The notes under the pieces: model-generated
What the model was told of the DNA's origin: nothing
What the model saw: the letters and a program-made list of their open reading frames with translations, nothing else
The model's database searches: none
Made by a program: the position numbers and the translations under genes
Shown here: piece after piece, positions 3,225 through 27,215 of the stretch
Position numbering within the stretch: the stretch's first letter is position 1
Layout: each line of letters begins with the position of its first letter
Assembly (NCBI GenBank): GCA_002104905.1
Contig: MCFE01000584.1
Location: 1 to 55,953 of the forward strand
Reading direction: 5' to 3'
Source of the DNA: Basidiobolus meristosporus CBS 931.73
Taxonomy: Eukaryota; Fungi; Basidiobolomycota
DNA length: 55,953 bases

Positions 3225-3360
3225 ACATTTTTATGGATCAGCCTGCGCAATATAGGACATACTCCATAGCAGATAAAGACACCCATGATATTGATGGATG
3301 CTCTAACCAAGATACACAGTACACAGAGCCCATGAAAGATGCCTTATATGGCAATGAGTC
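3225..3360 (+). pseudogene. Family A 3' fragment (relic)
   Basis: cagcctgcgcaa...gatggatgctctaaccaagatacacagtacacagagcccatg matches the QPAQ...EGCSDQDTQYTEPM region of the intact A genes. The 5' part is replaced by TE sequence. Confidence 0.75.
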
Positions 3361-3738
3361 TATGGAATGAACTTAAAGCCATTCAAGTTGCGTTGATTAT
3401 ATATTTCTTGCTTAATATGTAGTAGCAGAAGTATGATCCATGCCAGCACAAGAATAAGGGTAAGGCTAGAGCAGAATAAAGCGGACCCGCAATATCAGCC
3501 AGTAGTACCTTTCTGAGTAGTCAAAATGGATAAGTCAGCTGGCGCAGATAGCTGATACAATATCTGGTCAAGTTCCTGAGGGCTGTAAAACAATGGACTC
3601 CAGTATTTCGGCATATATGGCATTGTGCGGAGACTGCTCTACTTGCTAATTGCTTACATGAATAGGAGTAGTAGTGAATACGTGATCCATTAGCCTATTT
3701 ATTGTGGCGGGATCACAATAGTATTAAGCCTATTCATA

Positions 3739-4015
3739 TCATTAGCTGTCTCTGTATCTACCTCGACGGTAACATGATGTCTGATCGTCATCTTCATTCG
3801 AGTCTTGGTTTTCATCCTTGTCGGGAGTAAATAATTGCACATATGCCGACGTAGATGGTTGGAAAGTGCCTGAGCATTCTGTGCGGAGTTAGTTTAAACA
3901 TTGTCCAACCAGGGATGACATCGATGGTTCAGTCTCATGGTCTACTTATTGGTTGTCATGTGAAGCTATGGGTGTTGCAAAATACACACCGAATAGGATG
4001 AAGTGCTGTGAACAT
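3739..4015 (-). pseudogene. Family B (alpha subtype, RYRDS tail) relic
   Basis: Collinear with B genes (ggttggaaagtgcctgagcattctgtgcgg; tagctgtctctgtatctac tail), with internal deletions and frameshifts. Confidence 0.8.
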
Positions 4016-4481
4016 GAAGGTCTTGACAGAAGTATTCTTATTGCTTGTCCTACGCTGTTTCTTCCTGATATCAGTTGGTGTAATCTTGTTTGTATGTGTT
4101 GGATAGCCTAAAGAGATAGCGATTTTGTGATGGGATTTATTATGACATCAACAAAAATAAATAAACAATCCTCTTCAATTCTGATCTTGCTATACCACTA
4201 GCAATCTTTGTGAGTGTTTTGGGATATCTTCACCAGCCATCAGTCGATAGTATACTGAGCCAGATTTACGATGCATTGCATCGACCACCTTAGGTAGGTT
4301 TGGCAAAAATGCAACTCTCCATCACTTCATACATCGCCTCTACCCAATTGACCTCTATTGCACCAGATAAATCTTCAAGTCGGAACATTAACCGAGGGTT
4401 GTGTTGATTTGAAATAGAGTCATAAGAGTAGTGATAGCCAAGGGTATCAATGTGTATTCATCATAAGATTATCACAACTAT

Positions 4482-4823
4482 ATGGATGTGAATGAGGGCA
4501 AAGATGAAGGCGAAGGTGAGGACTCGATAGATGACACTTCAACTCAGCCAGAGTCATCCTACAACATGACAAACTGCAATATAGCAGATATGCAGCCAAG
4601 ACAGGCCTTGTTGGACAGAGTGAACGCTCACTCATCCAGTGATGCTGATGCCCTGTCGAACTCCAATCAGTTTGACCAAGCGCAGGTTATCGACCAAACC
4701 CTCTATCAGCCTAAGCAGCAACAGCCCCTAGATCATCATCACCCAGCCAGCCACCCGTAGCCATGTTGGACGCCAGAAGTACAAGAGATCTGCGCATAAG
4801 TGCTTCAAGAACAGATACATTGA
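4482..4823 (+). pseudogene. Family C, 5'-truncated and frameshifted copy
   Basis: The 92-aa ORF starts at the internal Met (MDVNEG) and matches C1/C2 through DQTLYQPKQ, then shifts frame. There is no signal peptide. The degenerate C tail and AATAAA follow. Confidence 0.85.
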
Positions 4824-5159
4824 ATAAATAAATATGACATTTGGCCACCTTAGATTAATATGAAACATCATCAGCCGTGATTCGTGAATTACCATACTAC
4901 AGCTGAAATATCACAAGTATATATGTATATATTGGTGTATGTATCAGTTTATTTATCGTACATTAATCATGTAGACTACGCGATATCAATGTGATGGAGT
5001 CGACAATATTAGAGAGAATGCTGATTTTCAATCTGACAAGGTGTGAGTTCATCAAAGTTAACTAACTATTGCTACCATCAATGTTGTAACCATGTTATAA
5101 TGGTTCCCATGCTATATATTCCCGAGTGTACTTGGCAATGGACTTAGTAGTTCTCAAAG

Positions 5160-5738
5160 ATGCGCGCATTCATTGTATCCTTGACCTTGGGCCTTGCTTC
5201 TCTTCAGGCCACCATTGCTGCTCCAGTCCCATGCTCCGAATCATGCAACCGTGAGCATAGAAGAGTCCGTTATCGCAGGTATTCATGCTCGGACCAAGCA
5301 AGCAACTGCTACCAGCAAGTCCAGGTTCAGCCCACTGTTGAAACACCAAACGTTCAAGTGCCACTGTTGCGTCAGGTGTTCACCACCGTGACCAGAAAGC
5401 ATGACAATCTGAACACTGCCAACGCCAACAGTGACAAGAGTCTCGATGTTCAGTTTCAAGCAGGCCCTAGCCTCGAAGTAGAAGGCTCAGCCAGCGCATC
5501 CGAGTACGCCAAACAGAAGGGTGCTGAACACTCCGAAGATGGCTCTGGTTACCCTATTGTTGTGGTTCAGCCTGCACAAGATGAGACATACTCCACACCA
5601 GTAGTGGACACCCAATGCATCGAAGGATGCTCTGACCAAGATACACAGTACTCTGAGCCCATGGAAGATGTTCAATGTGGCGACAACTGTGCTAATCAGG
5701 ACTCACAGTATACTGAGCCCATGGAAGACACTCAATGA
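5160..5738 (+). CDS. Family A secreted protein A1 (192 aa; Cys/Arg-rich N-terminus, acidic CxxxC repeats)
   Basis: Intact ATG ORF with hydrophobic signal MRAFIVSLTLGLASLQATIA|APVP. TATATA at 5113-5118 and AATAAA about 30 nt after the stop. Four near-identical intact copies. Confidence 0.9.
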   Translation: MRAFIVSLTLGLASLQATIAAPVPCSESCNREHRRVRYRRYSCSDQASNCYQQVQVQPTVETPNVQVPLLRQVFTTVTRKHDNLNTANANSDKSLDVQFQAGPSLEVEGSASASEYAKQKGAEHSEDGSGYPIVVVQPAQDETYSTPVVDTQCIEGCSDQDTQYSEPMEDVQCGDNCANQDSQYTEPMEDTQ

Positions 5739-6457
5739 CCCAACGACTGCACTTGAGCCCAAATGCAATAAAGTTACATTATTCATTTTATTTTTCGCCT
5801 CATAAGTGAGCAGAAATATAGCCATTAACAGCATGGGAGCAAAGAGCGTTTGACAAACTTAAAACCAAGCCAATTTCCACACTTCACTCTGATGATCCGA
5901 AGTCCAGTCACCAATTCAGGAGAAGGGTAGGAAACGTCTTGAAGTACTGCTTGAAGGTAGTGAGTGGCCTATTTAATATGCTCAGCGAGGGCTTAGTCAA
6001 TATGGATATCGGGCATCCTAGAGTGTATCGCTATGTCAAAAAGTCCAACTATTGCTCACCACCATTACCAGAAAACATGGTATCCTGAGTGCACATATAA
6101 TATGCACCACTAATTATAATGAAGAAAATTAGCGCTTGATATTCGCATTTCAGAGGGGACACAACCAAAATAATTCACACTGTCATGTGAGGAGTTGTTA
6201 GATGTTCTGAGCATAAAGGTTTTAACGTCGAATATGCCTAACCGAAAGGCACTGCGTATCCATATCTATGTTTGGTTATTTCGGTTGATGCTCATTCCAC
6301 TCATCCCTGTAGTCACATCTACGCTATTTTTCCTGATATCAGTTGGTGTAATCTTATTTGCAGAAGAAATGTGCGTGTTTTATAGTATGCAGAAATAGCG
6401 ATTATATGATAGGATTTATTATGAATGCCAAACCAATGTTTACATGATCCGATTGAG

Positions 6458-6892
6458 TCAAAAGCGGCCGCTGTATCTACTTCTACGGTAGCGTCGTTGA
6501 CAACGTTTGCACGATGGCTGATCGTCGTCGTCACTTGAGTCTTGAGTATCATCCTCATCGGGAGTAATTGATTGTACATATGTCGGTGCAGATGGTTGGT
6601 ACAATGTCTGATCTACTTGCTGCACTTGCTCATATTGATTCTGGTTGGAAAGTGCCTGAGCGTTCTGTGCAGAATGAGTCTGAGCGTTGTCCAACAATGG
6701 ATAGGCGTCTGAGGACTCTAGTTGATAGTATGTTGGTGCATATGACACTAATGGTTCATTGTCGGCATTGCCGCCAAAGTCCACTGGGACACCCTGGTCT
6801 ACTTGCTGGTTGTCATATGTTGCAATGGGCGATGCATAAGATGCACCGAATAGGAATACTAAGGCGGATAGAATGCGGAAAGTGCGTTGCAT
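6458..6892 (-). CDS. Family B secreted protein B1 (144 aa; acidic Q-rich body, CKRC plus Arg/Tyr tail)
   Basis: ATG at 6892 (the ORF track starts at a TTG at 6922). Signal MQRTFRILSALVFLFGASYA|SPIA. TATA-like CATAAAA about 40 nt upstream and AATAAA on the minus strand at ~6415-6420. Confidence 0.9.
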   Translation of the reverse strand: MQRTFRILSALVFLFGASYASPIATYDNQQVDQGVPVDFGGNADNEPLVSYAPTYYQLESSDAYPLLDNAQTHSAQNAQALSNQNQYEQVQQVDQTLYQPSAPTYVQSITPDEDDTQDSSDDDDQPSCKRCQRRYRRSRYSGRF

Positions 6893-7013
6893 GTTGGCTC
6901 CTGATGACACACTGGAAGGCAAACAGTTGCTTTTATGTATGGTTTGCTAGATTCATCAGCGATCATCAGCAACCAAACCCAGTTTACTAAATTATGCAGC
7001 AAAGGTGAGTAAA

Positions 7014-7096
7014 GTTAATCAGAATTTCACTTTCATTGCAATGATCAGTGAATAGGTGTTGATTAACACCGTAATCCCGGCGACCAATCACTTCAG
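7014..7096. promoter_or_regulatory. Conserved palindromic element plus CCAAT box in the divergent B/(A',C) promoter, copy 1
   Basis: GTTAATCA...TGATTAAC inverted pair around TCATTGCAATGA. TGATTAACACCGTAATCC and GCGACCAATCACTTCAG are invariant in 5 copies. Confidence 0.55.
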
Positions 7097-7611
7097 TACA
7101 TCAAGAAAAATAAATAAACATTAGTCTTCAATTTTGAGCTTGCTATACCACTTTGGAATGACAAACGCGGTAGTGAAGGGACAAACTAAAATGACTCATA
7201 CTACGCCTTTTCAAGCTATGGCTTGAAGTGAGCACACAGAAATCGCGTCGTTCTTGCGTAGTTCTCGATTTCATCGTCGAAGGCCACTAAGCTACTCTGA
7301 TTATATAGTACCCTGCAGCTATTTTTATGAGTATATTGGGATTATGAACGAATTAACATCTTCACCGGCCATCAGTCGATAGTATACTGCACTAAATTTA
7401 CCATTTAGCATTATGCATTGCATCGACCACCTCAAGTCCGCTTAGCAAAAATGTAACTCGCCATCACTTTGCTGGCCTCATATATCACCTCTATCCAAGC
7501 GATCTCTATTGCAGCAGATGAACCTAGAGTTGCGTTGATTTGAGATCGTAGATTCATAGGGATAGTGATTGCTAAGGGTATTAATGTGTACCTATCACTA
7601 TGACTATCAGC

Positions 7612-7956
7612 ATGTGGCTTTCCAAATCTTCAATGATGTAGCTACTTTTTCTTTTGGCCATCGTTGCTGCTCCAATTCCACGCTCCGAATCATGCAATCG
7701 CAAGCATAAAAGAGTGCATTATCGTAGTTCGTCATGCTCCGATCGAGCAAGTAACTGCCACCAGCAAGCCCGAGTTCTGCCAACTGTAGAGACTTCGAAT
7801 ATCTAAGTACGATTGTACGTTGAAGGATGCGTTGATCAGGATATACAGTACACTGAGCCCATGGAAGTTGCTCAGTTTGGCAATGACTGTGCCAATCAGG
7901 ACTTACTGTATGCTGACTTTATGGACGACACTCAACGTACCGACAACTGCACTTGA
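7612..7956 (+). pseudogene. Diverged family A paralogue (A') with its own signal peptide, inactivated
   Basis: Reads MWLSKSSMM*LLFLLAIVAAPIPRSESCNRKHKRVHYRSSSCSDRASNCHQQ. It has an in-frame TAG, an internal deletion and the C-terminal repeat remnant. Confidence 0.8.
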
Positions 7957-8173
7957 TTCAATAAATCTCGATTATCCATATCATTTGCTCTTAACGCCAA
8001 TCTAACTTGATTGCTAATAGCTAAACCAGGTAGTTAGTTGATGGACAACAAAAGCAGGACATAGCATGTGAGTTCCTGGCCTCAAGTGAGTCTGATACAG
8101 GGTGTAGTATAGTAGACTATGCCAAATACCACTATAAAGTGAGCTTACGACTGGTTTTACGATATTCATCAAA

Positions 8174-8728
8174 ATGCAGCTTACTCTCACTTTACTCGCT
8201 TTGTACTTTGCTTCTATCCATGCATTCCCTGCCACAGAAGATACCTCTTCTCAGGTGAGCTACGGTGACAATTTGTGCGGGGAGCAAGTAAGTCCTTGCT
8301 ACCCAGAAACGCAATCGCCTGCAGATGACTATCAGCCGGAACAGGACGAGGGTGATCACTATATGGATGAGAATGGAGGTGAAGATGAAGGCGAAGGTGC
8401 GGACTCAATGGATGGCACTACAACTCAGCCAGAGTCATCCTACAACATGCCCAGCTTCAATATAGCCGACCTGCAACCAAGACAGGCCTTGTTGGACAGA
8501 GTGAACGCGCAGTCATCCAGTGATGCTGATGCTCTGTCCAACTCTAATCAGTTTGACCAAGCGCAGGTTATCGACCAAACCCTCTATCAGCCTAAGCAGC
8601 CACAGCCCCAGATCATTATCACTCAGCCAGCCACCCGTAGCTATGGTGGAGGCCAGAAGAAGTACAAGAGGTCGGCACATAAGTACTTCAAGATCAGATA
8701 TTTCAGTGGGAATCGATACATTGATTAA
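8174..8728 (+). CDS. Family C secreted protein C1 (184 aa; very acidic body, Lys/Arg/Tyr/Phe tail)
   Basis: Intact ATG ORF with signal MQLTLTLLALYFASIHA|FPA. TATAAA at 8133-8138 and an AAATAAA poly(A) signal directly after the stop. Confidence 0.9.
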   Translation: MQLTLTLLALYFASIHAFPATEDTSSQVSYGDNLCGEQVSPCYPETQSPADDYQPEQDEGDHYMDENGGEDEGEGADSMDGTTTQPESSYNMPSFNIADLQPRQALLDRVNAQSSSDADALSNSNQFDQAQVIDQTLYQPKQPQPQIIITQPATRSYGGGQKKYKRSAHKYFKIRYFSGNRYID

Positions 8729-9072
8729 ATAAACATTTCATTTGGCCACCCTATATTAATATGAAACATCATCAGCCGTGCTTCGTGAATTACCACACTA
8801 CTGCTGAAATATCAAAAGCATATGCGTATATATTAGGGTATATATTGGTGTACTTATCAGTGTATTTATCGTGTTGTAACCAAATAAAGTACGCGATATC
8901 AATGCGATTGAGCCGATGATGGTAGAGCGAATGCTGCTTTTCAATCTGATAAAGTGTGAGTTCATCCAAGTTAACTAACTATTGCTACCATCAACGTTGT
9001 AACCATGTTATACTGGTTTCCATGCTATATATTCCCGAGTGTACTTGGCAATGAACTCAGCAGTTCTCAAAG

Positions 9073-9651
9073 ATGCGTGCATTCATTGTATCATTGATCT
9101 TGGGCCTTGCCTCTCTTCAAGCCGCCGTTGCTGCTCCAGTCCCATGCTCCGAATCATGCAACCGTGAGCATAGAAGAGTCCGTTATCGCAGGTATTCATG
9201 CTCGGACCAAGCAAGCAACTGCTACCAGCAAGTCCAGGTTCAGCCCACTGTTGAAACGCCAAACGTCCAAGCGCCATTGTTGCGTCAGGTGTTCACCACC
9301 GTGACCAGAAAGCATGACAATCTGAACACTGCCAACGCCAATAGTGACAAGAGTCTCGATGTTCAGTTTCAAGCAGGCCCTAGTCTCGAAGTAGAAGGCT
9401 CAGCCAGCGCATCCGAGTACGCCAAACAGAAGGGTGCTGAACACTCCGAAGATGGCTCTGGTTACCCCATTGTTATGGTTCAGCCTGGGCAAGATGAGAT
9501 ATACTCCACACCAGTAGTGGACACCCAATGCATCGAAGGATGCTCTGACCAAGATACACAGTACACTGAGCCCATGGTAGATGATCAATGTGGCGATGAC
9601 TGTGCTAATCAGGACTCACAGTATACTAAGCCCATGGAAGACGCTCAATGA
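9073..9651 (+). CDS. Family A secreted protein A2
   Basis: Intact 192-aa paralogue of A1 with the same promoter and 3' flank. Confidence 0.9.
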   Translation: MRAFIVSLILGLASLQAAVAAPVPCSESCNREHRRVRYRRYSCSDQASNCYQQVQVQPTVETPNVQAPLLRQVFTTVTRKHDNLNTANANSDKSLDVQFQAGPSLEVEGSASASEYAKQKGAEHSEDGSGYPIVMVQPGQDEIYSTPVVDTQCIEGCSDQDTQYTEPMVDDQCGDDCANQDSQYTKPMEDAQ

Positions 9652-10301
9652 ACCAACGACTGCACTTGAGCATAAATCCAATAAAGTTCCATTATTCATT
9701 TTTTTTTCGCCTTTTACGTGATAACAGAAATATAGTCGTTACCATCATGAAAACAAGGGTATTTGACAAACTGATGACCCAAAGTCCAGCGACTAGTCCA
9801 GGAGAAGGGTAAGAAACGTCCTGAAGTACTGCTGGAAGGTAATGGGTAGCTTATTCAATAAGTTTCTCATGGGTTTAGTCAATATGCAAATCGGGTCTCC
9901 TTGAGTGTATCGCCATTCCAAGCTAGAGTCAGCTGTTATAGAGGGTAGAATACATGATAATGTAAGGAGAATTCGGAGCGTGTCAAATCCAATAATCTGG
10001 AACTTTTGACTCATACTTATTGGTATCAGCAGAGTGAGGAAATACCCAAGCCCAACTATTGCTTACTACCATTACCAGCACATAACTAATATGCACTACA
10101 GACGAATGATTCTTATTGTAATTGAGAAAATTGGTGCTTGATCGGCTCTTTCCCTTACATTAATATCTGTTGATACTCGCCGTTGTTCCACCCATCCTTG
10201 TGGTCATGTCTCTCTTGTAACTTTTTCCTAGTATCAATTGTCAGAAACTGGAGTGATGTCGGTTATATATTACATTTTCTTATTTATTAAACCTATTCAT
10301 A

Positions 10302-10736
10302 TCAATAGCTGTCTCTGTATCTACGTCTACGGTAGCGTTGTTGACAACGTTTACACGATGGTTGATCGTCGTCGTCACTCGAGTCATGAATGTCATCCTC
10401 GTCGGGAGTAAACGATTGCACAAATGTCGGCGCAGATGGTTGGTACAATGTTTGATCTACTTGCTGCACCTGGTCGTACTGATTCTGGTTGGAAAGTGCC
10501 TGAGCGTTCTGTGCGGAATTCGTCTTCACATTGTCCAACAATGCATAGCCGTTTGGGGACTCTAGTTGATAGTATGTTGGGGTGTATGATATTGATGGTT
10601 CATTGTCGGTATTGCCACCAAAGTCCACTGGGATGCCCTGGTCTACTTGCTGGTTGTCGTACGTTGCAATGGGCGATGCATAAGATGCACCGAATAGGAA
10701 TACAAAGGCGGATAGAATGCGGAAAGTGCGTTGCAT
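10302..10736 (-). CDS. Family B secreted protein B2 (alpha-type tail RRRRYRDSY)
   Basis: Intact 144 aa from the ATG at 10736. The promoter matches B1/B3/B4/B5, while the 3' end and flank match the alpha relics. Confidence 0.88.
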   Translation of the reverse strand: MQRTFRILSAFVFLFGASYASPIATYDNQQVDQGIPVDFGGNTDNEPSISYTPTYYQLESPNGYALLDNVKTNSAQNAQALSNQNQYDQVQQVDQTLYQPSAPTFVQSFTPDEDDIHDSSDDDDQPSCKRCQQRYRRRRYRDSY

Positions 10737-10857
10737 GTTGGCTCTTGATGACACACTGGAAGGCAAACAGTTGCATTTATGTATGGTTTGCTAGATTCAT
10801 CAGCGATCATCAGCAACCAAACCCAGTTTACTAAATTATGAAGCAGAGGGGAGTAAA

Positions 10858-10940
10858 GTTAATCAGCATTTCATTTTCATTGTAATGATCGATGAGTAAT
10901 AGCTGATTAACACCGTAATCCAAGCGACCAATCACTTCAG
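10858..10940. promoter_or_regulatory. Conserved palindromic promoter element, copy 2
   Basis: Perfect 10-bp inverted pair GTTAATCAGC/GCTGATTAAC. Invariant TGATTAACACCGTAATCC and GCGACCAATCACTTCAG. Confidence 0.55.
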
Positions 10941-11440
10941 TACATGAAGAAAAATAAATAAACATTCGTCTTCAATTCTGGGCTTGGCTTACCACTTTGG
11001 AATGACAAACGCGGTAGTGAAGGGACTCGCCAAAATGACTCATACTATGCCTTTTCAAGCTATGGCTTGAAGTGAGCACACAGGAATGGCTTCATTCTTA
11101 CGTAGTTCTTGATTTCATAGTCGTAGAACGCTAGGCTACTCTGGTTATATAACAACCTGTAACAATCTTTGTGAGTGTTATGGGATCATGACTGAATTAA
11201 TATCTTCACCAGCCTTCAGTCGATAGTATACTGAGTTGAATTTACGATGTAGCATTATGCATTGCACCAATTAGCTTAGCTTAGCAAAAATGTAACTCAC
11301 CATCACCTCTGTCCAAGTGATCTTCCAGTGTAGCAGACGAATCTTCGAGTTGTGTTGATCCGAAACTGAAGAGCCGTAAGAATAGTGATTGTTAAGGGTA
11401 TTAATGTGTATTTATCATAGCACTTCAACTGCTAGTTTCT

Positions 11441-11785
11441 AATGCTCCGACCGAGCAAGTGACTGTTAACAGCAAGTCCAAGTTCTGCATACTGTTGAAA
11501 CGTCGAATGTCCAAGTCCCATTATTATGTCAAGTGCTCACCACTGATACCAAAAAACATGGCAATCTGAGCACTGCTAACGCTAATAGGGAAAAGAGTCT
11601 TAATGCCAAGCTGGCCCTAGCCTCGAAGTAGAAGGTTCAGCCAGCGCATCCGAGTACGCCAAACTGAAGAGTGCTGAGCAATCAGACGATGGCTCTAATT
11701 TCCCATTGTTGTGACTTAGCCTGCACAAGATGAGACATACACTACACCAGTAGTAGACACCCAATGCGTTGAAGGATGCGCTGAT
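11441..11785 (+). pseudogene. A' relic (5'-deleted, frameshifted)
   Basis: Matches A from CSDRAS through GPSLEVEGSASASEYAK to PVVDTQCVEGCADQD, with stops and indels. Confidence 0.8.
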
Positions 11786-12150
11786 CAAGATACTGAAAGG
11801 AATACAAGAGATCGGCTCAGATATTCTAGTGGAAATAGACAATGAACATCATTTCACTTGACCACCTTATATTAAAATGAAACATCAGCATTGATTCGTA
11901 AATCACTATACTACAGCTGGAATATCAAAAGCATATGTGCATTTATTGGTGTATTTATCAGTGTATTTATCAGTGTATTTATCCTCCTGTAATCATGCAA
12001 ACTACGCGATGATGGTAGACAGAATGCAAATTTTCAATCTGATCAAAGTTAACTAACTATTGCTGCCATCAATGTTAAAACCATATTATACTGGCTCCCA
12101 TGCTATATATTCCAGAGTGAATTCAGCAATGAACTCAGTAGTTCTTACAG

Positions 12151-12729
12151 ATGCGTACATTCATTGTATCCTTGATCTTGGGCCTTGCCTCTCTTCAAGC
12201 CACCATTGCTGCTCCAGTCCCATGCTCCGAATCATGCAACCGTGAGCATAGAAGAGTCCGTTATCGCAGGTATTCATGCTCAGACCAAGCAAGCAACTGC
12301 TACCAGCAATCCCAGGTTCAGCCCACTGTTGAAACGTCAAACGTTCAAGTGCCACTGTTGCGTCAGGTGTTCACCACCGTGACCAGAAAGCATGACAATC
12401 TGAACACTGCCAACGCCAACAGTGACAAGAGTCTCGATGTTCAGTTTCAAGCAGGCCCTAGCCTTGAAGTAGAAGGCTCAGCCAGCGCATCCGAGTACGC
12501 CAAACAGAAGGGTGCTGAATACTCAGACGATGGCTCTGGTTACCCCATTGTTATAGTTCAGCCTGCACAAGATGAGACATACTCCACACCAGTAGTGGAC
12601 ACCCAATGCATCGAAGGATGCTCTGACCAAGATACACAGTACACTGAGCCCATGGTAGATGTTCAATGTGGCGATGACTGTGCTAATCAGGACTCACAGT
12701 ATACTGAGCCCATGGAAGACACTCAATGA
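12151..12729 (+). CDS. Family A secreted protein A3
   Basis: Intact 192-aa paralogue. The upstream C gene is missing, but the C-A intergenic sequence (11860-12150) is retained. Confidence 0.9.
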   Translation: MRTFIVSLILGLASLQATIAAPVPCSESCNREHRRVRYRRYSCSDQASNCYQQSQVQPTVETSNVQVPLLRQVFTTVTRKHDNLNTANANSDKSLDVQFQAGPSLEVEGSASASEYAKQKGAEYSDDGSGYPIVIVQPAQDETYSTPVVDTQCIEGCSDQDTQYTEPMVDVQCGDDCANQDSQYTEPMEDTQ

Positions 12730-13375
12730 ACCAACGACTGCACTTGAGCCCAAATCCAATAAAGTTTCATTATTCATGTTATTTTTCGTCTCATATGTGA
12801 TAGCAGAAATATAGCCATTACCAGCATGGGAACAAGAGCATTTGACAAACTCAACACCACGCCAATTTCTTCCCTCTGATGACCCGAAGTCCAGCTACCA
12901 ATTCAGGAGAAGAGTAAGAAGCTGGTTAAGCTTGGCTATGCACGTGTTTAAGTACTGCTCGTAGGTATTGGGTGGCTTATTTAATAAGCTCAACCCGGGC
13001 CTAGTCAATATGGAGATAGGGCATCCTAGAGTGTATCGCTATCTCAAGAAGTCCAACTATTACTCACTACCATGAGCGCACATATAACATGCACCACAGA
13101 CGAGTGATTCTTACTATAATTGAGAAATTTAGCGCTTGATCGGCTCTTTCCCTTACTTCAATCTCTGTTGATACTCGCCATTATTTCACCCATCCCTGTG
13201 GGCACATCTCTTGTGTATCATATTTGAAAGCTTGTTTACAGAAGAATTGGGTGTACCTGATAGCCTACATGGACAGGGACACTGGAGTAATATCGATTGT
13301 ATGATACATTAACCTATTTATTATGCTGGGATCACCATAGTCATAAAATGTAGAAAGGCCAATAATCTGTTCTCA

Positions 13376-13792
13376 TCAATAGCTGTCTCTGTATCTACGT
13401 CTATACGCTGGCTGATTGTCATCATCACCAGAGTCTTGGTCTTCATCCTCGTCGGGAGCCAATGATTGCACATACGTCGACGCAAATGGTTGGTACAATG
13501 TCTGATCTATTTGCTGCATACTGATTCTGGCTGGGAAGTGCCTGAGCATTCTGTACGGAGTTAGTTTGAATATTGCTCAACAAGGGATAGCTAATTAGGG
13601 ACTCTAGCTGGTAATCTGCCGGCGCATATGATATTAATGGTTCAGTCTCATAGTCCACTTGGACACTCTGGTTTACTTATTGATTGCCATATGTAGCAAT
13701 GGGCAATGCATAGGATACACCGAATAGGAATACTAAGGTGGATAAAATGCGTGGATAAAATGCGTGGATAAAATTCGGAAATTACGTCGCAT
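13376..13792 (-). pseudogene. Family B alpha relic
   Basis: ATG at 13792, a 13-bp tandem duplication (gataaaatgcgtg) in the signal region, frameshifts, and an RYRDSY tail. Confidence 0.85.
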
Positions 13793-14203
13793 ATTGGCTC
13801 TTAGTTATACACTGGAATACAAAAAGTTGCTTTTGTTTTTATCAACAATCATCAGCAGCCAAAGCTCAGTTGATAGCTATTCTATGTGGCCAATCATCAA
13901 TAAAAACAATACACCGCCAATTAAACCGATGTATCATCGATCTACGCACTTCATTACCTATACCATCATCCATTTATTGCTCACCACGACTGCTTGCCAT
14001 TATTCATTATTGTTCGCAAATTGGAGAGAACAAAACCAAAATGTTTCATGTGAGGAGTCATTGCTCATTCCACACATCCCTGTGGTCACGTCTCCTCTGA
14101 TGTCAGTTGGTGTAATGTGTGTGTTGGATAGCTTACAGAAGTAGCGATTATTTTATAGGATTTATTGTGAATGCCAAACTAGTGTTATCATGACCCGATT
14201 GAA

Positions 14204-14638
14204 TCAAAAGCGGCCGCTGTATCTACTTCTACGGTAGCGTCGTTGACAACGTTTACACGATGGCTGGTCGTCGTCGTCACTCGTGTCTTCAGTGTCATCC
14301 TCGTCGGGAGTAAATGATGGCGCATATGTCGGTGCAGATGGTTGGTACAATGTCTGATCTACTTGCTGCACTTGCTCATATTGATTCTGGTTGGAAAGTG
14401 CCTGAGCGTTCTGTGCGGAATTAGTCTGAGCGTTGTCCAATAATGGATAGGTGTCTGGAGACTTTAGTTGATAGAATGTTGGAGTGTATGACATTAATGG
14501 CTCATTGTCGGTATTGCCACCAAAGTCCGCTGGGATACCCTGGTCTATTTGCTGGTTGTCATACGTTGTAATGGGCGACGCAGAAGATACACCGAATAGG
14601 AATACTAAGGCGGATAGAATGCGGAAAGTGCGTTGCAT
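14204..14638 (-). CDS. Family B secreted protein B3
   Basis: Intact 144 aa with the tail CKRCQRRYRRSRYSGRF, identical to B1. Confidence 0.9.
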   Translation of the reverse strand: MQRTFRILSALVFLFGVSSASPITTYDNQQIDQGIPADFGGNTDNEPLMSYTPTFYQLKSPDTYPLLDNAQTNSAQNAQALSNQNQYEQVQQVDQTLYQPSAPTYAPSFTPDEDDTEDTSDDDDQPSCKRCQRRYRRSRYSGRF

Positions 14639-14759
14639 GTTGGCTCTTGATGACGCACTGGAAGGCAAACAGTTGCATTTATGTATGGTTTGCTAGATTC
14701 ATCAGCGATCATCAGCAACCAAACCCAGTTTACTAAATTATGACGCAGAGGGGAGTAAA

Positions 14760-14841
14760 GTTAATCAGCATTTCATTTTCATTGTCATGATCGATGAGTA
14801 AAACTGATTAACACCGTAATCCAAGCGACCAATCACTTCAG
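14760..14841. promoter_or_regulatory. Conserved palindromic promoter element, copy 3
   Basis: Same invariant blocks as copies 1 and 2. Confidence 0.5.
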
Positions 14842-15330
14842 TACATGAAGAAAAATAAATAAACACTCTTCAATTCTGCGCCGCCGCACGATTTGGGAAT
14901 GACATTAGCGGTTGTGAAGAGACAAACCAAAATGACTCATACTACGCCTTTTCAAGCTATGGCTTGAGGTGAGCACACAGGAATGGCTTCGTTCTTACGT
15001 AGTTTTTGATTTCATGGTCGTAGAATGGTAACCTGCTCGGGTTATATAGCGACCTGTAGCTATTTTAATGCGTATTATGGGATTATGAATGAATTCATAT
15101 TTTACCAGTCATCATTCGGTAGCATACTGAGCTAGATTAACAATTTGGCATCAAGCATTGCATCAACCACCACAAGATGATACAGCGCCTCTATCCAAGG
15201 GATCTCTATTGCCGCAGATGAACTTCAAGTCGAAACATGAACCTAGATTTGCGTTGATTTCAAATTGTAGATTCATAGGAATAGTGGTTGCTTAGGGTAT
15301 TAATGTGAATTTATCACTGCGACTATTAAC

Positions 15331-15503
15331 ATATGGCTTTCCAAATGCTCAATGACGTCGCTACTTTTTCTTTTGGCCATCGTTGCTGCTTCAATACACT
15401 GAGCCCACGGAATATGCTCAGTGTTGTAATGATTGTGCTTAGCAGGACTCACCGACTGCAGACTTTATGGATGACACTTAATGTACCTATAACTGCACTT
15501 AAT
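15331..15503 (+). pseudogene. A' relic with a large internal deletion
   Basis: ATGACGTCGCTACTTTTTCTTTTGGCCATCGTTGCTGCT (MTSLLFLLAIVAA) is joined directly to the C-terminal repeat remnant. Confidence 0.75.
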
Positions 15504-15689
15504 TCAATGAATCTCGATTATCCATATGAGCCCATATCTTCACAAGTACTTAGTGGATAGTCAACCACAGCTGGACATGGCATGTGAATTCATGGCTTCA
15601 AGTAAGTCAGATATAGGATGCAGTATAATAGACTACGCCAAATACCACTATAAAGTGAGCTTACGACTAGTTTTACGCTATTCATCGAA

Positions 15690-16244
15690 ATGCAGCTTAC
15701 TCTCGCTTTACTCGCTTTGTACTTTGCTTCTATCCATGCATTACCCGCCACAGAAGATACCTTTTCTCAGGTTAGCAACGACAACAACTTGTGCGGGGAG
15801 CAAATAAGTCCTTGCTACCAAGAAACTCAATCGCCTGCATATGACTATCAGCCGGAACAGGATGAGGGTGATAGCTATATGGATGAGAATGAGGGCGAAG
15901 ATGAAGGCGAAGGTGAGGACTCAATGGATGATACTTCAACTCAGCCAGAGTCATCCTACAACATGCCAAACTTCAATGTAGCCGACATGCAACCCAGAAA
16001 GGCATTGTTGGACAGAGTGAACGCTCACTCATACAGTGATGCTGATGCTCTGTCGAACTCTAATCAGTTTGACCAAGCGCAGGTTATCGACCAAACCCTC
16101 TATCAGCCTAAGCAGCAACAGCCGCGGATCATCATTACCCAGCCAGCCACCCGTAGCTATGGTGGAGGCCAGAAGAAGTACAAGAGGTCGGCACATAAGT
16201 ACTTCAAGATCAGATATTTCAGTGGGAACAGATACATTGAATAA
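15690..16244 (+). CDS. Family C secreted protein C2
   Basis: Intact 184-aa paralogue of C1. TATAAA upstream and AATAAA overlapping the stop. Confidence 0.9.
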   Translation: MQLTLALLALYFASIHALPATEDTFSQVSNDNNLCGEQISPCYQETQSPAYDYQPEQDEGDSYMDENEGEDEGEGEDSMDDTSTQPESSYNMPNFNVADMQPRKALLDRVNAHSYSDADALSNSNQFDQAQVIDQTLYQPKQQQPRIIITQPATRSYGGGQKKYKRSAHKYFKIRYFSGNRYIE

Positions 16245-16563
16245 ATAAACATGGCATTTGGTCACCCTATATTAATATGAAACATCATCAGTTGTAATTC
16301 GTGAATTACCACACCAAAGCTGAAATTTTATCAAAAGCATATGCGTATATATTGGTGTATTTACCAGTGTATTTATCGTGCTGTAACCATATAATCTACG
16401 CGATATCAATGCGATTGAGCCGATGATGGTAGAGCGAATGCTGCTTTTCAATCTGATAAAGTTAACTAACTATTGCTACCATCAGTGTTGTAACCATGTT
16501 ATAATGGTTCCCCTGCTATATATTCCCGAGGGAATTCAGCAATGAACTCAGTAGTTCTCAAAG

Positions 16564-17142
16564 ATGCGTACATTCATTGTATCATTGATCTTGGGCCTTG
16601 CCTCTCTTCAAGCCGCCGTTGCTGCTCCAGTCCCATGCTCCGAATCATGCAACCGTGAGCATAGAAGAGTCCGTTATCGCAGGTATTCATGCTCGGACCA
16701 AGCAAGCAACTGCTACCAGCAAGTCCAGGTTCAGCCCACTGTTGAACCGCCAAACGTCCAAGTGCCATTGTTGCGTCAGGTGTTCACCACCGTGACCAGA
16801 AAGCATGACAATCTGAACACTGCCAACGCCAACAGTGACAAGAGTCTCGATGCTCAGTTTCAAGCAGGCCCTAGCCTCGAAGTAGAAGGTTCAGCCAGCG
16901 CATCCGAGTACGCCAAACAGAAGGGTGCTGAACACTCAGACGATGGCTCTGACTACCCCATTGTTATGGTTCAGCCTGCGCAAGATGAGACATACTCCAC
17001 ACCAGTAGTGGACACCCAATGCATCGAAGGATGTTCTGACCAAGATGCACAGTATACTGAGCCCATGGAGGATGTTCAATGTGTCGATGACTGTGCTAAT
17101 CAGGACTCACAGTATACTGAGCCCATGGAAGACACTCAATGA
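16564..17142 (+). CDS. Family A secreted protein A4
   Basis: Intact 192-aa paralogue. Confidence 0.9.
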   Translation: MRTFIVSLILGLASLQAAVAAPVPCSESCNREHRRVRYRRYSCSDQASNCYQQVQVQPTVEPPNVQVPLLRQVFTTVTRKHDNLNTANANSDKSLDAQFQAGPSLEVEGSASASEYAKQKGAEHSDDGSDYPIVMVQPAQDETYSTPVVDTQCIEGCSDQDAQYTEPMEDVQCVDDCANQDSQYTEPMEDTQ

Positions 17143-17451
17143 ACCAAAGACTGCACTTAAGTCCAAATGCAATAAAGTTACATTATTCATTTTATTTTTC
17201 GTCTCATATGTGATTGCAGAGATATAGCCATTACGAAATATGGGAACAAGAGCGTTTGACAAACTCAACACCACGCCAATCTCCATACTTCCCTCTGATG
17301 ACCCGAAGTCCAGCCACCAATTCAGGAGAGGGGTAAGAAACTGGTAAAGCTCGGCTATGCACGTCTTTAAGTCCTGCTTGGAGGTAGTGGGTGGCTCATT
17401 TAATAAGCTCAACGAGGGCTTAGTCAATATGGAGATCGGACATCCTAGAGT

Positions 17452-17694
17452 GTGGCTGACCGTCATCGTCACTCAAGTCTTGGTCCTCATCCTCGTGGGG
17501 AGTAAATGGTTACACATATGTCGACGTAGATGGTTGGAAAGTGCCTGAGCATTCTGTGCGGAGTTAGTTTAAACATTGTCCAACAACAATAGGTGACTGG
17601 GAACTCTAGCTGGGTGGGCGATGCATTGGATACACCGAATAGGAATACCAATGTGGACAAAATGCGTGAATAAAATGCGTAAATTTCGTTGCAT
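17452..17694 (-). pseudogene. Family B alpha relic (internally and 3' deleted)
   Basis: ATG at 17694. The signal-peptide remnant ILSTLVFLFGVSNASP is fused to QLEFPVTY. The tail is deleted. Confidence 0.8.
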
Positions 17695-18176
17695 ATTGGC
17701 ACTTAGTTACACACTGGAATACAAAGAGTTGCTTTTGTTTTTACCAACAATCATCAACAGCCGAAGCTCAGTTGATAGCTATTCTATGTGGCCAATCATC
17801 AATAAAAACAATCCACAGCCAATTGAACCTATGTATCATCGATCTACGTATTTCATTAGCTATACCATCATCCATTTATTGCTATCCACGATTGCTCACC
17901 ACTATTTCATTTTAGTAGTTTGTTCAATATTGCTCGCAAATTGGAGGGTACAAAACCAAAATGATTCACACTACTGTTTAAAGGTTCATTGCCAGAATGT
18001 TCATGATGCTCATTCCACTCATACCAGGGGTCACGTCTCCGCTGTTTCTTCCGGATATCAGTTGTTATAATCTTAATTGCAGAAGAAATGTGTGTGTTTT
18101 ATAGCTTGCAGAAATAGCGATTATATGATGGGATTTATTTTGAATGCCAAACTAGTGTTTACATGATCTGATTTCA

Positions 18177-18611
18177 TCAAGAGCTGCCTCTGTATCCACG
18201 TCTACGGTAGCGTCGTTGACAACGTTTACACGATGGCTGATCGTCGTCGTCACTCGAGTCTTCAGTGTCATCCTCGTCGGGAGTATTTGATTGCACATAT
18301 GTCGGTGCAGATGGTTGGTACAATGTCTGATCTACTTGCTGCACTTGCTCAAATTGATTCTGGTTGGAAAGTGCCTGAGCGTTCTGTGCAGAATTAGTCT
18401 GAGCGTTGTCCAACAATGGATAGGTGTCTGGAGACTCTAGTTGATAGTATGTTGGTGTGTATGACATTAATGGCTCATTGTCGGCATTGTCTTTAAAATC
18501 CACCGGGATGCCCTGGTCTACTTGCTGGTTGTCATACGTTGCAATGGGCGATGCATAAGATGCACCGAATAGGAATACTAAGACGGATAGAATGTGGAAA
18601 GTGCGTTGCAT
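18177..18611 (-). CDS. Family B secreted protein B4
   Basis: Intact 144 aa with the tail CKRCQRRYRRRGYRGSS. Confidence 0.9.
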   Translation of the reverse strand: MQRTFHILSVLVFLFGASYASPIATYDNQQVDQGIPVDFKDNADNEPLMSYTPTYYQLESPDTYPLLDNAQTNSAQNAQALSNQNQFEQVQQVDQTLYQPSAPTYVQSNTPDEDDTEDSSDDDDQPSCKRCQRRYRRRGYRGSS

Positions 18612-18732
18612 GTTGGCTCTTGATGACACACTGGAAGGCAAACAGTTGCATTTATGTATGCTTTGCTAGATCCATCAACGATCATCAGCAACCAAACCCA
18701 GTTTACTAAATTATGAAGCAAAGGTGAGTAAA

Positions 18733-18815
18733 GTTAATCAGCATTTCACTTTCATTGCACTGATCAGTGAGTAAGAGTTGATTAACACCGTAATCCAGGC
18801 GACCAATCACTTCAG
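18733..18815. promoter_or_regulatory. Conserved palindromic promoter element, copy 4
   Basis: Same invariant blocks. Confidence 0.5.
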
Positions 18816-18901
18816 CACATCAAGAAAAATAAATAAACATTTCTCTTCAATTCTGGGCGTGCTATACCACTTTGATATGACAGGACGAGGGTGATCACTA
18901 T

Positions 18902-19267
18902 ATGGATGAGAATGAGGGCGAAGATGAAGGCGAAGGTGAGGACTCGATGGATGGCACTACAACTCAGCCAGAGTCATCCTACAACATGCCAAACTTCAAT
19001 ATAGCCGACATGCAACCAAGGCAGGCTTTGTTGGACAGAGTGAACGCTCAGTCATCCAGTGATGCTGATGCTCTGTCCAACTCTAATCAGTTTGACCAAG
19101 CGCAGGTTATCGACCAAACCCTCTATCAGCCTAAGCAGCAACAGCCCCGGATCATTATCACTCAGCCAGCCACCCGTAGCTATGGTGGAGGCCAGAAGAA
19201 GTACAAGAGGTCGGCACATAAGTACTTCAAGATCAGATATTTCAGTGGGAATCGATACATTGATTAA
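18902..19267 (+). CDS. Family C copy C3 lacking the signal peptide (121 aa; possibly a pseudogene)
   Basis: Open from the internal Met MDENEG to the normal stop. The 5' end was removed by a deletion whose junction is at ~18878-18883. Confidence 0.5.
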   Translation: MDENEGEDEGEGEDSMDGTTTQPESSYNMPNFNIADMQPRQALLDRVNAQSSSDADALSNSNQFDQAQVIDQTLYQPKQQQPRIIITQPATRSYGGGQKKYKRSAHKYFKIRYFSGNRYID

Positions 19268-19931
19268 ATAAATATATCATTAGGCCACCTAATATTAATA
19301 TGAAACATCATCAGCCGTAATCCGTGAAATACCACACTACAGCTGAAATATCAAAAGCATATGTGTATATATTAGGGTATACATTGGTGTATTTATCAGT
19401 GTATTTATCGTGCTGTAACCATATAATCTACGCGATATCAATGCGATTGAGCCGATGATGGTAGAGCGAATGCTGCTTTTCAATCTGATAAAGTGTGAGT
19501 TCATCAAAGTTAATGAACTATTGCTACCATCACTGTTGTAACCATGTGATAATGGTTCCCATGTTATATGTTCCCGAGTGAATTTAGCAATGAACACCAG
19601 CAGAGCGATAAAATACGAAATCCTAACTATTGCTCACTACCATTACCAGCACATAACTAATATGCATTCTTATTGAAATTTTGAAAATTGGTGCTTGTTC
19701 GGCTCTTTCCCTTACCTCAATCTCTGCCGATACTCGCCGTTGTTCCACCCATCCCTTTGGTCATGTCTCTTTTGTGGCTTTTTCCTGGTGTTTATTGTCA
19801 GAAACTGGTTCGCGGAAGAATTGCGTGCATTTGATAGCTTACATCAATAGGGAAACTAGAGTGATGTCGATTTTACAATACATTTTCTTATTTATTATAC
19901 TGGGATCACAATGGTATTAAACCTATTCTTA

Positions 19932-20289
19932 TCAATAGCTGTCTCTGTATCTACCACTACGGTGTACACGATGGCTGATCGTCGTCGTCACTTGAGTCTT
20001 GGATCTCATCCTCGCCTGGGGTAAATGATTGCACATATGTTGACGTAGATGGTTGGAAAGTGCCTTAGCATTTAGTGCGGGATCAGTTTGAACATTGTCC
20101 AACAAGGGATAGGTGACTGGGGACTCCAGCTGGTAGTCAGTCGGTGCATATGGCATCGATGGTTCAGTCCCCATAGTCCACCGGGACACCTAGGTCTACT
20201 TGTTGGCTACCATATGTAGCAATGGGCGATGCACAGGATACACCGAATAGGAATACCAAGGTGGATAAGATGCGGAAATTACGTTGCAT
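19932..20289 (-). pseudogene. Family B alpha relic (frameshifted)
   Basis: From the ATG at 20289: MQRNFRILSTLVFLFGVSCASPIATYGSQQVDLGVPVDYGD*. The rest continues in another frame (ORF 19932-20189) and ends RYRDSY. Confidence 0.85.
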
Positions 20290-20898
20290 GTTACACACTG
20301 TAATGTAAACAGTTGCTTTATGTTTGATGGACAAGATTTATCAACGATCATCAGCAATTGAAGCTCAGTTGAGTGAAGCTAATCCTATGTTGATAGTTAT
20401 TCTATGTGGCCAATCATCAAAGGACAAAAATTAGGATAAAAACAATGCACAGCCAATTGAACCTATGTGCCATCGATCTACATTGCTTATATCATCATCC
20501 ATCTGTTGCTCACCACAACTACTCACCACTATTCCATTTTAGTAATTTAACCATTTATGGAAACCAAAATGATTCACACTATCATGTGAGGAGTCGTTAC
20601 CAGAATGCTGGTACCTATTGAATGTTCATTATTGTTCTCTATCATGATGCTCTGAACATATATGGCTGACAGAAGGGTGCTGCGTATTCCTATCTATACT
20701 TGATTGTTTCTGTTGATCCTCATTCCACTCATCCCTGTGGTCACGTCTCCGCTATTTCTTCCTGATGTCAGTTGGTATAATCTTGCTTGCAGAAGAAATG
20801 TGCGTTTGATAGCTTGCAGAAATAGCAATTATTTGATAGGATTATTATGAATGCCAAACTAGTGTTTACACGATCCGATTTCATCAAAAGCCGCCTCT

Positions 20899-21288: not shown

Positions 21289-21409
21289 GTTGGCTCTTGA
21301 TGACACACTGGAAGGCAAACAGTTGCTTTTATGTATGGTTTGCTAGATTCATCAGCGATCATCAGCAACCAAACCCAGTTTACTAAATTATGAAGCAAAG
21401 GTGAGTAAA

Positions 21410-21492
21410 GTTAATCAGCGTTTCACTTTCATTGCAATGATCAGTGAATAGGGGTTGATTAACACCGTAATCCAGGCGACCAATCACTTCAG
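21410..21492. promoter_or_regulatory. Conserved palindromic promoter element, copy 5
   Basis: Retains TTCACT-TCATTGCAATGA-AGTGAA and the invariant blocks. Confidence 0.5.
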
Positions 21493-22109: not shown

Positions 22110-22189
22110 TTACCCATATTATTTGCTGTTTTCTGTGAAAAGAGCAGTGATTCACTACAGCATTTTCTTTGAAAGGAGCACAACAACAT

Positions 22190-27138: not shown

Positions 27139-27215
27139 TCCAGCTTCAAGCTCCTGTAATCATCCCGTGAACAATCTTCACCTGGATTATTGGGAAACTC
27201 CAATGTCCAGTTACA

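What the first reader, a model, noticed from the sequence alone, without database searches (positions are those of the whole stretch)
8504..8593. B and C share a 24-aa N/Q-rich motif; its DQTLYQP core is identical in protein but differs at all 7 codons
Seen: B NAQALSNQNQYEQVQQVDQTLYQP (6593-6664, minus) aligns with C DADALSNSNQFDQAQVIDQTLYQP at 16/24 identity, and both are preceded by LLD...NAQ. B1 codons are GAT CAG ACA TTG TAC CAA CCA. C1 codons are GAC CAA ACC CTC TAT CAG CCT. Every codon differs synonymously, which argues for old common ancestry and purifying selection on this motif rather than recent copying. Inference: an N/Q-rich segment with regularly spaced hydrophobic/aromatic residues resembles beta-arch or functional-amyloid cores (e.g. 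curli CsgA/CsgB repeats, fungal HET-s). B and C could therefore co-assemble through it.
Basis: partly seen in the sequence, partly recalled or inferred. Interest (0 to 1): 0.8.

Follow-up and report, generated by a model that had tools for sequence, protein, structure and literature searches.

The report
Conserved motif in Basidiobolus secreted paralogs
Two neighbouring families of small secreted, unstructured proteins in the frog-gut fungus Basidiobolus share a strongly conserved 35-residue glutamine/asparagine-rich block because they are old gene duplicates kept by selection; nothing tested here shows that it forms amyloid.

Summary
C (8174-8728, +) and B (6458-6892, -) share a 35-residue block running from LLD to DQTLYQP.

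B and C are homologous over 75 residues (BLASTP E 6e-11). Synonymous sites are saturated, so the 7/7 streak is a picked run. Over the whole block, 11 of 20 identical residues use different codons, against 12.5 expected at saturation.

Purifying selection holds. The motif's dN/dS is 0.08-0.26, against 0.5-0.6 for B's flanks.

The window is almost certainly a Basidiobolus meristosporus CBS 931.73 scaffold. A profile search of 1.84 billion proteins finds the motif only in B. meristosporus and B. ranarum. B-type and C-type clades each hold both species, so the duplication predates their split.

AlphaFold2 predicts disorder. There is no beta periodicity, there is one motif copy per ORF examined, and no known amyloid family matches. 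The amyloid/co-assembly reading is therefore unsupported but not excluded.

New here: single-exon B. ranarum genes fuse the A-family domain to this motif.

The scan noted other arrays of secreted acidic-front, cationic-tail proteins elsewhere in this genome.

The parts
8174..8728 (+). C-family gene (184 aa): signal peptide, Cys loop, acidic disordered body, conserved motif, QIIITQ segment, basic Tyr/Lys/Arg tail
   Evidence: ORF. 92% identical to K493DRAFT_299869 of B. meristosporus. AlphaFold2 predicts it disordered.
8489..8593 (+). C copy of the shared 35-residue block (LLD to DQTLYQP). The finding's 8504-8593 lies inside it; the core DQTLYQP is 8573-8593.
   Evidence: The C-family alignment has an unbroken invariant run over ALSNSNQFDQAQ.
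8594..8725 (+). C tail: KQPQPQIIITQP followed by a basic Tyr-rich end (KKYKRSAHKYFKIRYFSGNRY)
   Evidence: As constrained as the motif: dN/dS 0.06-0.11. Aligns weakly with the B tail.
6458..6892 (-). B-family gene (144 aa from the ATG at 6892): signal peptide, Tyr/Gln-rich front, conserved motif, poly-Asp stretch, Cys-x2-Cys Arg/Tyr tail
   Evidence: ORF. 98% identical to K493DRAFT_309098.
6593..6697 (-). B copy of the shared 35-residue block; the core DQTLYQP is 6593-6613
   Evidence: dN/dS is 0.11 here against 0.51-0.58 in B's flanks.
10437..10541 (-). Motif block of the second B copy (gene 10302-10736)
14339..14443 (-). Motif block of the third B copy (gene 14204-14638)
18312..18416 (-). 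Motif block of the fourth B copy (gene 18177-18611)
21001..21105 (-). Motif block of the fifth B copy (gene 20899-21288, which has a shortened tail)
16005..16109 (+). Motif block of the second intact C copy (gene 15690-16244)
4608..4712 (+). Motif block of a truncated C copy. The ORF 4482-4760 starts at an internal Met and ends early after KQQQP.
19028..19132 (+). Motif block of an N-terminally truncated C copy (ORF 18902-19267)
9073..9651 (+). A-family gene (192 aa), the third member of the repeated unit. It lacks the motif but shares its N-terminal Cys-loop region with C. In other loci it is fused to the motif domain.
   Evidence: hhalign of A against the motif half: no homology. A against full-length C: 40 N-terminal columns, probability 80%, E 1.5e-5. 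Fusions.
3225..22110 (.). Tandem array of about five units of roughly 3.9 kb, in the order C, A, then B on the opposite strand, with decayed fragments between them
   Evidence: Repeat families with spacings of 3.8-4.4 kb; ORF list

Best explanation
B and C are old paralogs within a family of small secreted, intrinsically disordered proteins found only in Basidiobolus. The shared block (LLD, about 12 residues, then ALSN-x-NQ-[FY]-[DE]-Q-x-Q-x-x-DQT-[LI]-YQP) is the family's conserved core.

Shown:
- The block was inherited from a duplication that predates the split of B. meristosporus and B. ranarum.
- It has since been held by purifying selection on the amino-acid sequence, not on the DNA.
- The proteins have a signal peptide, an acidic low-complexity body, then the motif, then a basic Tyr/Arg/Lys tail. 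The signal peptide is read by inspection and from an AlphaFold2 helix.
- The genes are amplified in tandem arrays.

Inferred:
- The motif most likely acts as a short linear recognition or docking segment that gains structure only when bound. It may be helical, since AlphaFold2's only non-signal helix lies at its QALLDRV start.
- The leading partner candidates are the secretory processing or sorting machinery acting on an acid-masked cationic tail, or the A-family domain. The A domain is encoded next to the motif genes in this window and is fused to the motif in single-exon B. ranarum genes.

The ancestry and selection part is near-certain. The docking mechanism is a best guess at about 0.4.
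For: - Homology of B and C: BLASTP E 6e-11. There are 15 invariant columns across 18 B and C sequences.
- Age: pS 0.80-0.90, which is saturated. The B-type/C-type bipartition has 100/97 support with both species on each side.
- Selection: motif dN/dS 0.08-0.26, against 0.5-0.6 in B's flanks.
- Taxonomic range: profile A1 against 1.84 billion representatives gives 25 hits at E<=1e-3. The ten that were new and looked up are all B. meristosporus or B. ranarum; one further hit is a repeat-rich, unrelated-looking protein.
- No other matches: PDB, Pfam and the Atlas give nothing significant.
- Disorder: pLDDT 52.8 and 52.0. The only non-signal helix is at residues 105-111 of C.
- Link to A: single-exon A+motif genes in B. 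ranarum (P0030, P0053, P0058). In B. meristosporus, an ORF reads straight from A's acidic end into mature C (L005 381-1127).
- Charge layout: acidic body and basic tail.
Against: - No partner has been identified.
- AlphaFold2 on a natural A+motif fusion shows no contact between the two parts, though the alignment was shallow (21 rows).
- Nearly every motif position is conserved, with no clear helical periodicity of conservation. That would also fit a tightly packed self-assembly.
- The dibasic site between motif and tail is not conserved in position (KR in B. meristosporus, RR/KK in B. ranarum) and is absent in P0030, which weakens the pro-peptide sub-option.
Confidence: 0.55

Rival explanations
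1. One reading: the N/Q-rich block is a beta-arch or functional-amyloid core, and B and C homo- and hetero-polymerise through it outside the cell.
For: - B's 24-residue stretch is 46% Q/N, with aromatic and aliphatic residues interspersed.
- Monomers are predicted disordered, as amyloid formers usually are.
- Almost all motif positions are constrained.
- The genes are co-amplified and linked on at least 7 scaffolds, judging by the contig lengths listed.
- C has a strongly beta-prone QIIITQ segment just downstream, which carries the highest pLDDT in the model.
Against: - There is one motif copy in every ORF examined, with no stacked repeats. The one listed protein with three matched stretches (P0052) was not checked against its DNA.
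- No Pfam amyloid family matches at E up to 10: Curlin_rpt, HET-s, the sigma/PP motifs and chaplin are all absent.
- The hydrophobic moment at 160-180 degrees is about 0.01-0.05.
- C's motif has four Asp and no basic residue, so in-register stacking would pile up like charges.
- The mature proteins are about 16-20% Q/N and 15-17% Asp+Glu, which is not prion-like.
Confidence: 0.12
2. B, C and A are structural or adhesive matrix proteins, for example spore or capilliconidium glue, or a wall coat. Acidic blocks and basic Tyr-rich tails would condense by charge (coacervation), and the conserved motif would be an ordered junction or cross-linking site.
For: - Block polyampholyte layout: net charge falls to -9 per 20 residues in the body and rises to +7 in the tail.
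- High Tyr, Gln, Ser and Asp content.
- High gene dosage through tandem arrays.
- B. ranarum relatives carry long Met/Glu/Pro and His/Lys repeats (P0053).
- Atlas feature neighbours are arthropod Tyr-rich secreted proteins, but at chance-level scores of 0.8 or less.
Against: The case rests purely on composition. There are no localisation or expression data. The Atlas scores are at the level that shuffled sequences reach. A glue role would not obviously demand near-invariance of 20 consecutive residues.
Confidence: 0.12
3. The similarity reflects recent copying, gene conversion, or a constraint at the DNA/RNA level (for example the antisense ORFs over B) rather than selection on the protein.
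For: Long antisense ORFs overlap each B copy, for example 6568-6990. The genes lie in a recombining tandem array.
Against: Between B and C, synonymous sites are saturated while 20 of 35 residues are identical. There is therefore no shared nucleotide tract to conserve or convert. The motif is kept in B. ranarum with different codons and a different gene arrangement.
Confidence: 0.01

Closest known systems
Lineage-specific fungal small secreted protein (SSP) families in tandem arrays
   Same: Signal peptide, under 250 aa, no Pfam domain, genus-restricted, birth-and-death evolution in arrays with truncated copies.
   Different: Most SSP families are Cys-rich and folded. These are predicted disordered, with one nearly invariant linear motif and a charge-block layout.
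Animal antimicrobial-peptide or prohormone precursors (signal, acidic propiece, dibasic site, cationic peptide), such as dermaseptin-type precursors, and granins/ProSAAS
   Same: Signal peptide, acidic spacer, KR in B and C of B. meristosporus, and a cationic Tyr/Arg/Lys C-terminal tail. Five B members give weak ProSAAS hits (best 17.4 bits).
   Different: The ProSAAS score is below the 23-bit cutoff, so this is not a member. The dibasic site is not positionally conserved and is absent in P0030. In C the tail is as conserved as the motif, not hypervariable. No activity is known.
Curli CsgA/CsgB repeats and fungal HET-s-type amyloid motifs
   Same: Q/N-rich with interspersed hydrophobic and aromatic residues. 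Two related proteins carry the same motif, as CsgA/CsgB or HET-s/NWD2 do.
   Different: No sequence match. The motif is single rather than repeated, lacks the Gly/Asn turn positions, and is acidic. The proteins are secreted eukaryotic ones with no NLR or csg-type partner nearby.
Ustilago maydis Rep1 repellents (Kex2-processed secreted peptides that form amyloid on hyphae; PMC3133707, abstract seen)
   Same: A fungal secreted pre-pro-protein with KR sites and a proposed surface role.
   Different: Rep1 is one gene with 11 repeated peptides flanked by KR. B and C each have one motif and one tail, and show no sequence similarity to any other protein family.

Membership tests
Curlin repeat (CsgA/CsgB, Pfam PF07012) | Match to the Curlin_rpt profile / S-x5-Q-x-G-x-G-N-x-A-x3-Q consensus | tested here: not met
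   hmmscan of 18 motif-bearing segments at E up to 10 does not list Curlin_rpt. The motif has no Gly.
Curlin repeat (CsgA/CsgB, Pfam PF07012) | Several (about five) tandem imperfect repeats per protein forming a beta-solenoid | tested here: not met
   One copy per ORF in the window's B and C copies and in every B. ranarum ORF examined.
Fungal amyloid signalling motifs (HET-s, sigma, PP) | Profile match; position at the end of a cytosolic protein, next to an NLR gene | tested here: not met
   No Pfam hit. The proteins have N-terminal signal peptides. The neighbours are A/B/C genes and retrotransposons.
Q/N-rich prion-like domain | A long stretch with high Q/N content and few charged residues | tested here: not met
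   Mature B is 20% Q+N and 15% D+E. Mature C is 16.5% Q+N and 16.5% D+E. The C motif has four Asp.
Any functional amyloid | Cross-beta fibrils (ThT, EM, X-ray fibre diffraction) | not testable with these tools
   Only monomer AlphaFold2 was available, and it predicts disorder.
Prepropeptide of a cationic (antimicrobial-type) peptide | Signal peptide followed by an acidic propiece and a cationic C-terminal peptide | tested here: met
   Charge windows for C: -4, -6, -9 in the body and +7 in the tail. B: -5 in the body, then +3. N-terminal hydrophobic helix in the P0058 model. No SignalP-type tool was available.
Prepropeptide of a cationic (antimicrobial-type) peptide | Conserved dibasic processing site between the propiece and the peptide | tested here: inconclusive
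   KR in B. meristosporus B and C. RR and KK at other columns in B. ranarum. None in P0030.
ProSAAS / granin | Pfam PF07259 at or above its gathering score | tested here: not met
   Best score 17.4 bits against a cutoff of 23, and in B-type members only.
Basidiobolus B/C motif family (defined here) | The LL...ALSN-x-NQ..Q-x-Q..DQT-x-YQ block after a signal peptide and an acidic body, followed by a Tyr/Arg/Lys tail | tested here: met
   Alignments A1 and A2. Profile hits of 1e-10 to 1e-54 in both species.

The most novel reading that the evidence does not exclude
The motif is the nucleating segment of an undescribed secreted self-assembling material of Basidiobolus, either an amyloid or a charge-driven condensate or glue. 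In this material B-type and C-type proteins co-polymerise, possibly together with the A domain that is fused to the motif in B. ranarum.
Probability: 0.1. Interest if true: 0.75.

Novelty: new member of a known kind. Interest (0 to 1): 0.3.

Why it matters
As it stands, this is an orphan, genus-restricted family of small secreted proteins whose paralogs share a conserved module. That is a common pattern in fungal genomes.

What it adds:
- A clean definition of the family's conserved core.
- Evidence that the B/C duplication is older than the two sequenced Basidiobolus species.
- A gene-fusion link between the A domain and the motif domain, which gives a concrete pairing to test.

Basidiobolus lives in amphibian and reptile guts and is an occasional pathogen. 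Its heavily amplified secreted proteins are uncharacterised. If the motif proved to be a self-assembly or processing signal, it would open a new fungal system. Nothing here shows that yet.

Tried and rejected
- Pfam on full-length A, B, C and on 18 motif segments: nothing above threshold. Only sub-threshold ProSAAS and one chance Lig_chan hit.
- Profile search of PDB sequences: one chance hit at E 0.25.
- ESM Atlas feature search: no usable hit for C, and chance-level hits of 0.8 or less for B.
- AlphaFold2 of C with 19 homologs, and of the natural A+B-type fusion P0058 with 21 rows: both disordered (pLDDT about 52). No fold search was run, because it would be meaningless.
- hhalign of the A family against the motif half: no homology (probability 1.8%). 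My by-eye alignment of A's PLLRQVFTTVTRKH block with the motif is therefore rejected.
- Literature search for the motif strings: none found. Searches on Basidiobolus with secretome-type terms returned nothing specific to this family.
- By eye, I considered an EF-hand-type Ca loop, N-glycosylation sequons, and RFamide/NPY-like ends. None fits the conserved positions.
- P0008 (an A-C 'fusion' in B. meristosporus) is a spliced database model. The underlying DNA shows one ORF running from A's acidic end into mature C, with a frame break further upstream.

Full report
**What is there.**
The first 22 kb of the window hold about five tandem units of roughly 3.9 kb. Each unit carries up to three small ORFs that begin with a signal-peptide-like segment:
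- C: 184 aa, + strand. Intact at 8174-8728 and 15690-16244. Truncated at 4482-4760 and 18902-19267.
- A: 192 aa, + strand. Copies at 5160, 9073, 12151 and 16564.
- B: 144 aa from its ATG, - strand. Five copies, for example 6458-6892.

Decayed fragments of A and B lie between the intact genes. The rest of the window holds a broken Ty3/gypsy-type retrotransposon and other repeats.

**Organism.**
The best protein hits are hypothetical proteins of Basidiobolus meristosporus CBS 931.73 at 92-98% identity. Three B proteins appear with masked sources on a contig of exactly the window's length. The window is therefore almost certainly a whole scaffold of that genome.

**The observation.**
It holds as written.
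- 8504-8593 encodes residues 111-140 of C, and 6593-6664 (-) encodes the quoted 24 residues of B. They are 16/24 identical. Both are preceded by LLD and NAQ.
All four C copies use the C codon set. Four of five B copies use the B set; the fifth shares one Gln codon with C.
- The similarity extends beyond the 24 residues. BLASTP aligns 75 residues at 40% identity, E 6e-11 with composition adjustment.
- An alignment of 18 B and C sequences from two species has 15 invariant columns, in the pattern LL...ALSN-x-NQ..Q-x-Q..DQT-x-YQ.

**How much the codon pattern says.**
- Over the 35-codon block, Nei-Gojobori pS is 0.80 (0.90 over the 24 codons). That is above the saturation limit. pN is 0.23-0.28.
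- Of the 20 identical residues, 11 use different codons. Using the codon usage of the window's own genes, 12.5 are expected at full saturation.
- The seven-in-a-row core has P of about 0.02 even at saturation, whereas only 4 of the 13 identical residues upstream differ. The 7/7 is therefore a selected streak.
- The conclusion still stands. There is no shared nucleotide tract, so recent copying, gene conversion and DNA- or RNA-level constraint are excluded, and selection acts on the protein.

**Selection.**

| Comparison | Motif dN/dS | Other regions |
|---|---|---|
| Four full-length B copies in the window | 0.11 | 0.58 upstream, 0.51 downstream |
| Two intact C copies in the window | 0.26 (few changes) | tail 0.11 |
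| Seven C-type genes of a B. ranarum array | 0.08 | tail 0.06, variable front 0.16 |

**Range and age.**
- A profile of the motif plus tail (A1) was searched by HMMER against 1.84 billion representative proteins. It gave 25 hits at E<=1e-3.
- The ten hits that were new and looked up are all from B. meristosporus or B. ranarum. One other hit is a 1126-aa repeat protein that looks unrelated.
- Pfam, PDB sequences and the ESM Atlas give nothing significant. No paper in the library contains the motif strings.
- A maximum-likelihood tree of 61 motif-plus-tail segments separates a B-type clade from a C-type clade with 100/97 support. The B-type clade has an acidic stretch followed by a Cys/Arg tail. 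The C-type clade has IIIT/IIIP followed by a KKYK...RYFSG tail. Both species are present on both sides. The duplication therefore predates the species split, which agrees with the saturated dS.

**Structure.**
- AlphaFold2 with the family alignment predicts C as disordered: mean pLDDT 52.8, one short helix at QALLDRV, and the highest confidence at QIIITQ.
- A natural B. ranarum protein that joins an A-like domain to a B-type motif and tail is also predicted disordered apart from its signal helix.
- Both alignments are shallow, and nearly invariant in the motif. This shows lack of evidence for a fold, not proof of disorder.
- The 20-residue core has essentially no hydrophobic moment at 160-180 degrees (0.01-0.05). 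Its maximum (0.27-0.30) is at 110-130 degrees.
- Conservation has no clear periodicity, because almost every position is fixed.
- An AGGRESCAN-type scale finds no hot spot in ALSNSNQFDQAQ. Hot spots lie in QIIITQ and KYFKIRYF of C and in PTYVQSI of B.

**Context that changes the picture.**
- In B. ranarum, C-type genes form their own tandem array of about eight copies, with no A or B between them.
- B. ranarum also has single-exon genes in which an A-like domain is followed, after a low-complexity linker, by a C-type motif and tail (P0030, P0053) or by a B-type motif and tail (P0058). P0055 and the partial P0061 show the same layouts as proteins; their DNA was not examined.
- In B. meristosporus, one locus has an ORF that reads from A's acidic end straight into mature C (L005 381-1127).
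- A and C also share their N-terminal region, around a C-x2-Q-x3-C-Y loop (hhalign probability 80%, E 1.5e-5).
- A has no detectable similarity to the motif half.
- A, B and C thus look like rearranged pieces of one modular ancestral gene. The A domain and the motif domain are linked by fusion, which makes A a candidate partner.

**Mechanism.**
Shown: B and C are secreted-type, disordered, charge-block proteins (acidic body, basic Tyr-rich tail) with one strongly selected linear motif.

Inferred: the motif is a docking or recognition segment that becomes ordered on binding. Candidate partners are the secretory processing or sorting machinery, as in acid-masked cationic peptide precursors, or the A domain.

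The pro-peptide sub-option is weakened because the dibasic site is not fixed and is missing in P0030. Earlier notes of this scan describe other arrays of secreted acidic-front, cationic-tail proteins in this genome. I did not test them, and I count them only as leads.

**The amyloid reading.**
It fails every membership test that could be run:
- No Curlin, HET-s, sigma or PP profile match.
- A single motif rather than stacked repeats.
- Acidic, with no basic counter-charge inside the motif.
- Not prion-like in composition.
- Secreted, with no NLR or csg-type neighbours.

These are tests of membership in known families, not tests of whether the peptide can form fibrils, which only experiment can answer. 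I put it at about 0.12. A charge-driven matrix or glue role is about the same.

**Limits.**
- There was no signal-peptide predictor and no multimer prediction.
- Only two Basidiobolus genomes are represented.
- The truncated copies are described as found.

Noticed in passing
L002 86-856; L003 5900-6985; L004 3770-4735 (B. ranarum); L005 381-1127 (B. meristosporus): Single-exon genes join an A-family domain to the B-type or C-type motif and tail. In this window A, B and C are separate genes. This suggests one modular ancestral gene, and an A-motif functional link.
   Followed up: partly
window 5220-5340 versus 8210-8330: A and C share a homologous N-terminal region around a C-x2-Q-x3-C-Y loop (hhalign probability 80%, E 1.5e-5), although A lacks the Q/N motif.
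   Followed up: partly
window 7647-7981: A decayed A-like fragment with in-frame stops lies directly upstream of the intact C gene at 8174 (repeat families D17 and D19; ORF 7654-7806).
   Followed up: no
L001 1-11215 (B. ranarum): About eight C-type genes lie head to tail at a spacing of 1.2-1.9 kb, with no A or B genes between them. The three-gene unit is therefore not conserved between the species.
   Followed up: partly
window 6568-6990, 10424-10834, 21105-21386 (+): ORFs of 93-140 aa run antisense to each B copy. They are probably a by-product of B's Gln-rich codon content. B-C synonymous divergence shows that they do not explain the conservation.
   Followed up: partly
window 3549-3569, 13487-13507, 19932-20189 (-): B-like remnants. 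Two keep the DQ[TI]LYQ core, with stops or lost sequence upstream. One ORF loses the frame inside the motif.
   Followed up: no
window 26605-30208 (+): Ty3/gypsy-type retrotransposon with gag, zinc knuckle, RT, RNase H and integrase, split over several frames.
   Followed up: partly
window 46289-47453: Minisatellite with a 29-nt unit, 40 copies, 94% matches.
   Followed up: no
window 32712-33818 (-), 43495-44136 and 44490-44894 (+): ORFs with repeated Lys/Gln/Ser-rich segments (a recurring 'RDKQA.TDA' phrase) and no Pfam match. Possibly parts of an unclassified repeat element.
   Followed up: no
P0053 (L003 5900-6985), P0054: B. ranarum and some B. meristosporus C-type relatives carry long Met/Glu/Pro and His/Lys repeats in the linker. 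These look like metal-binding composition.
   Followed up: no
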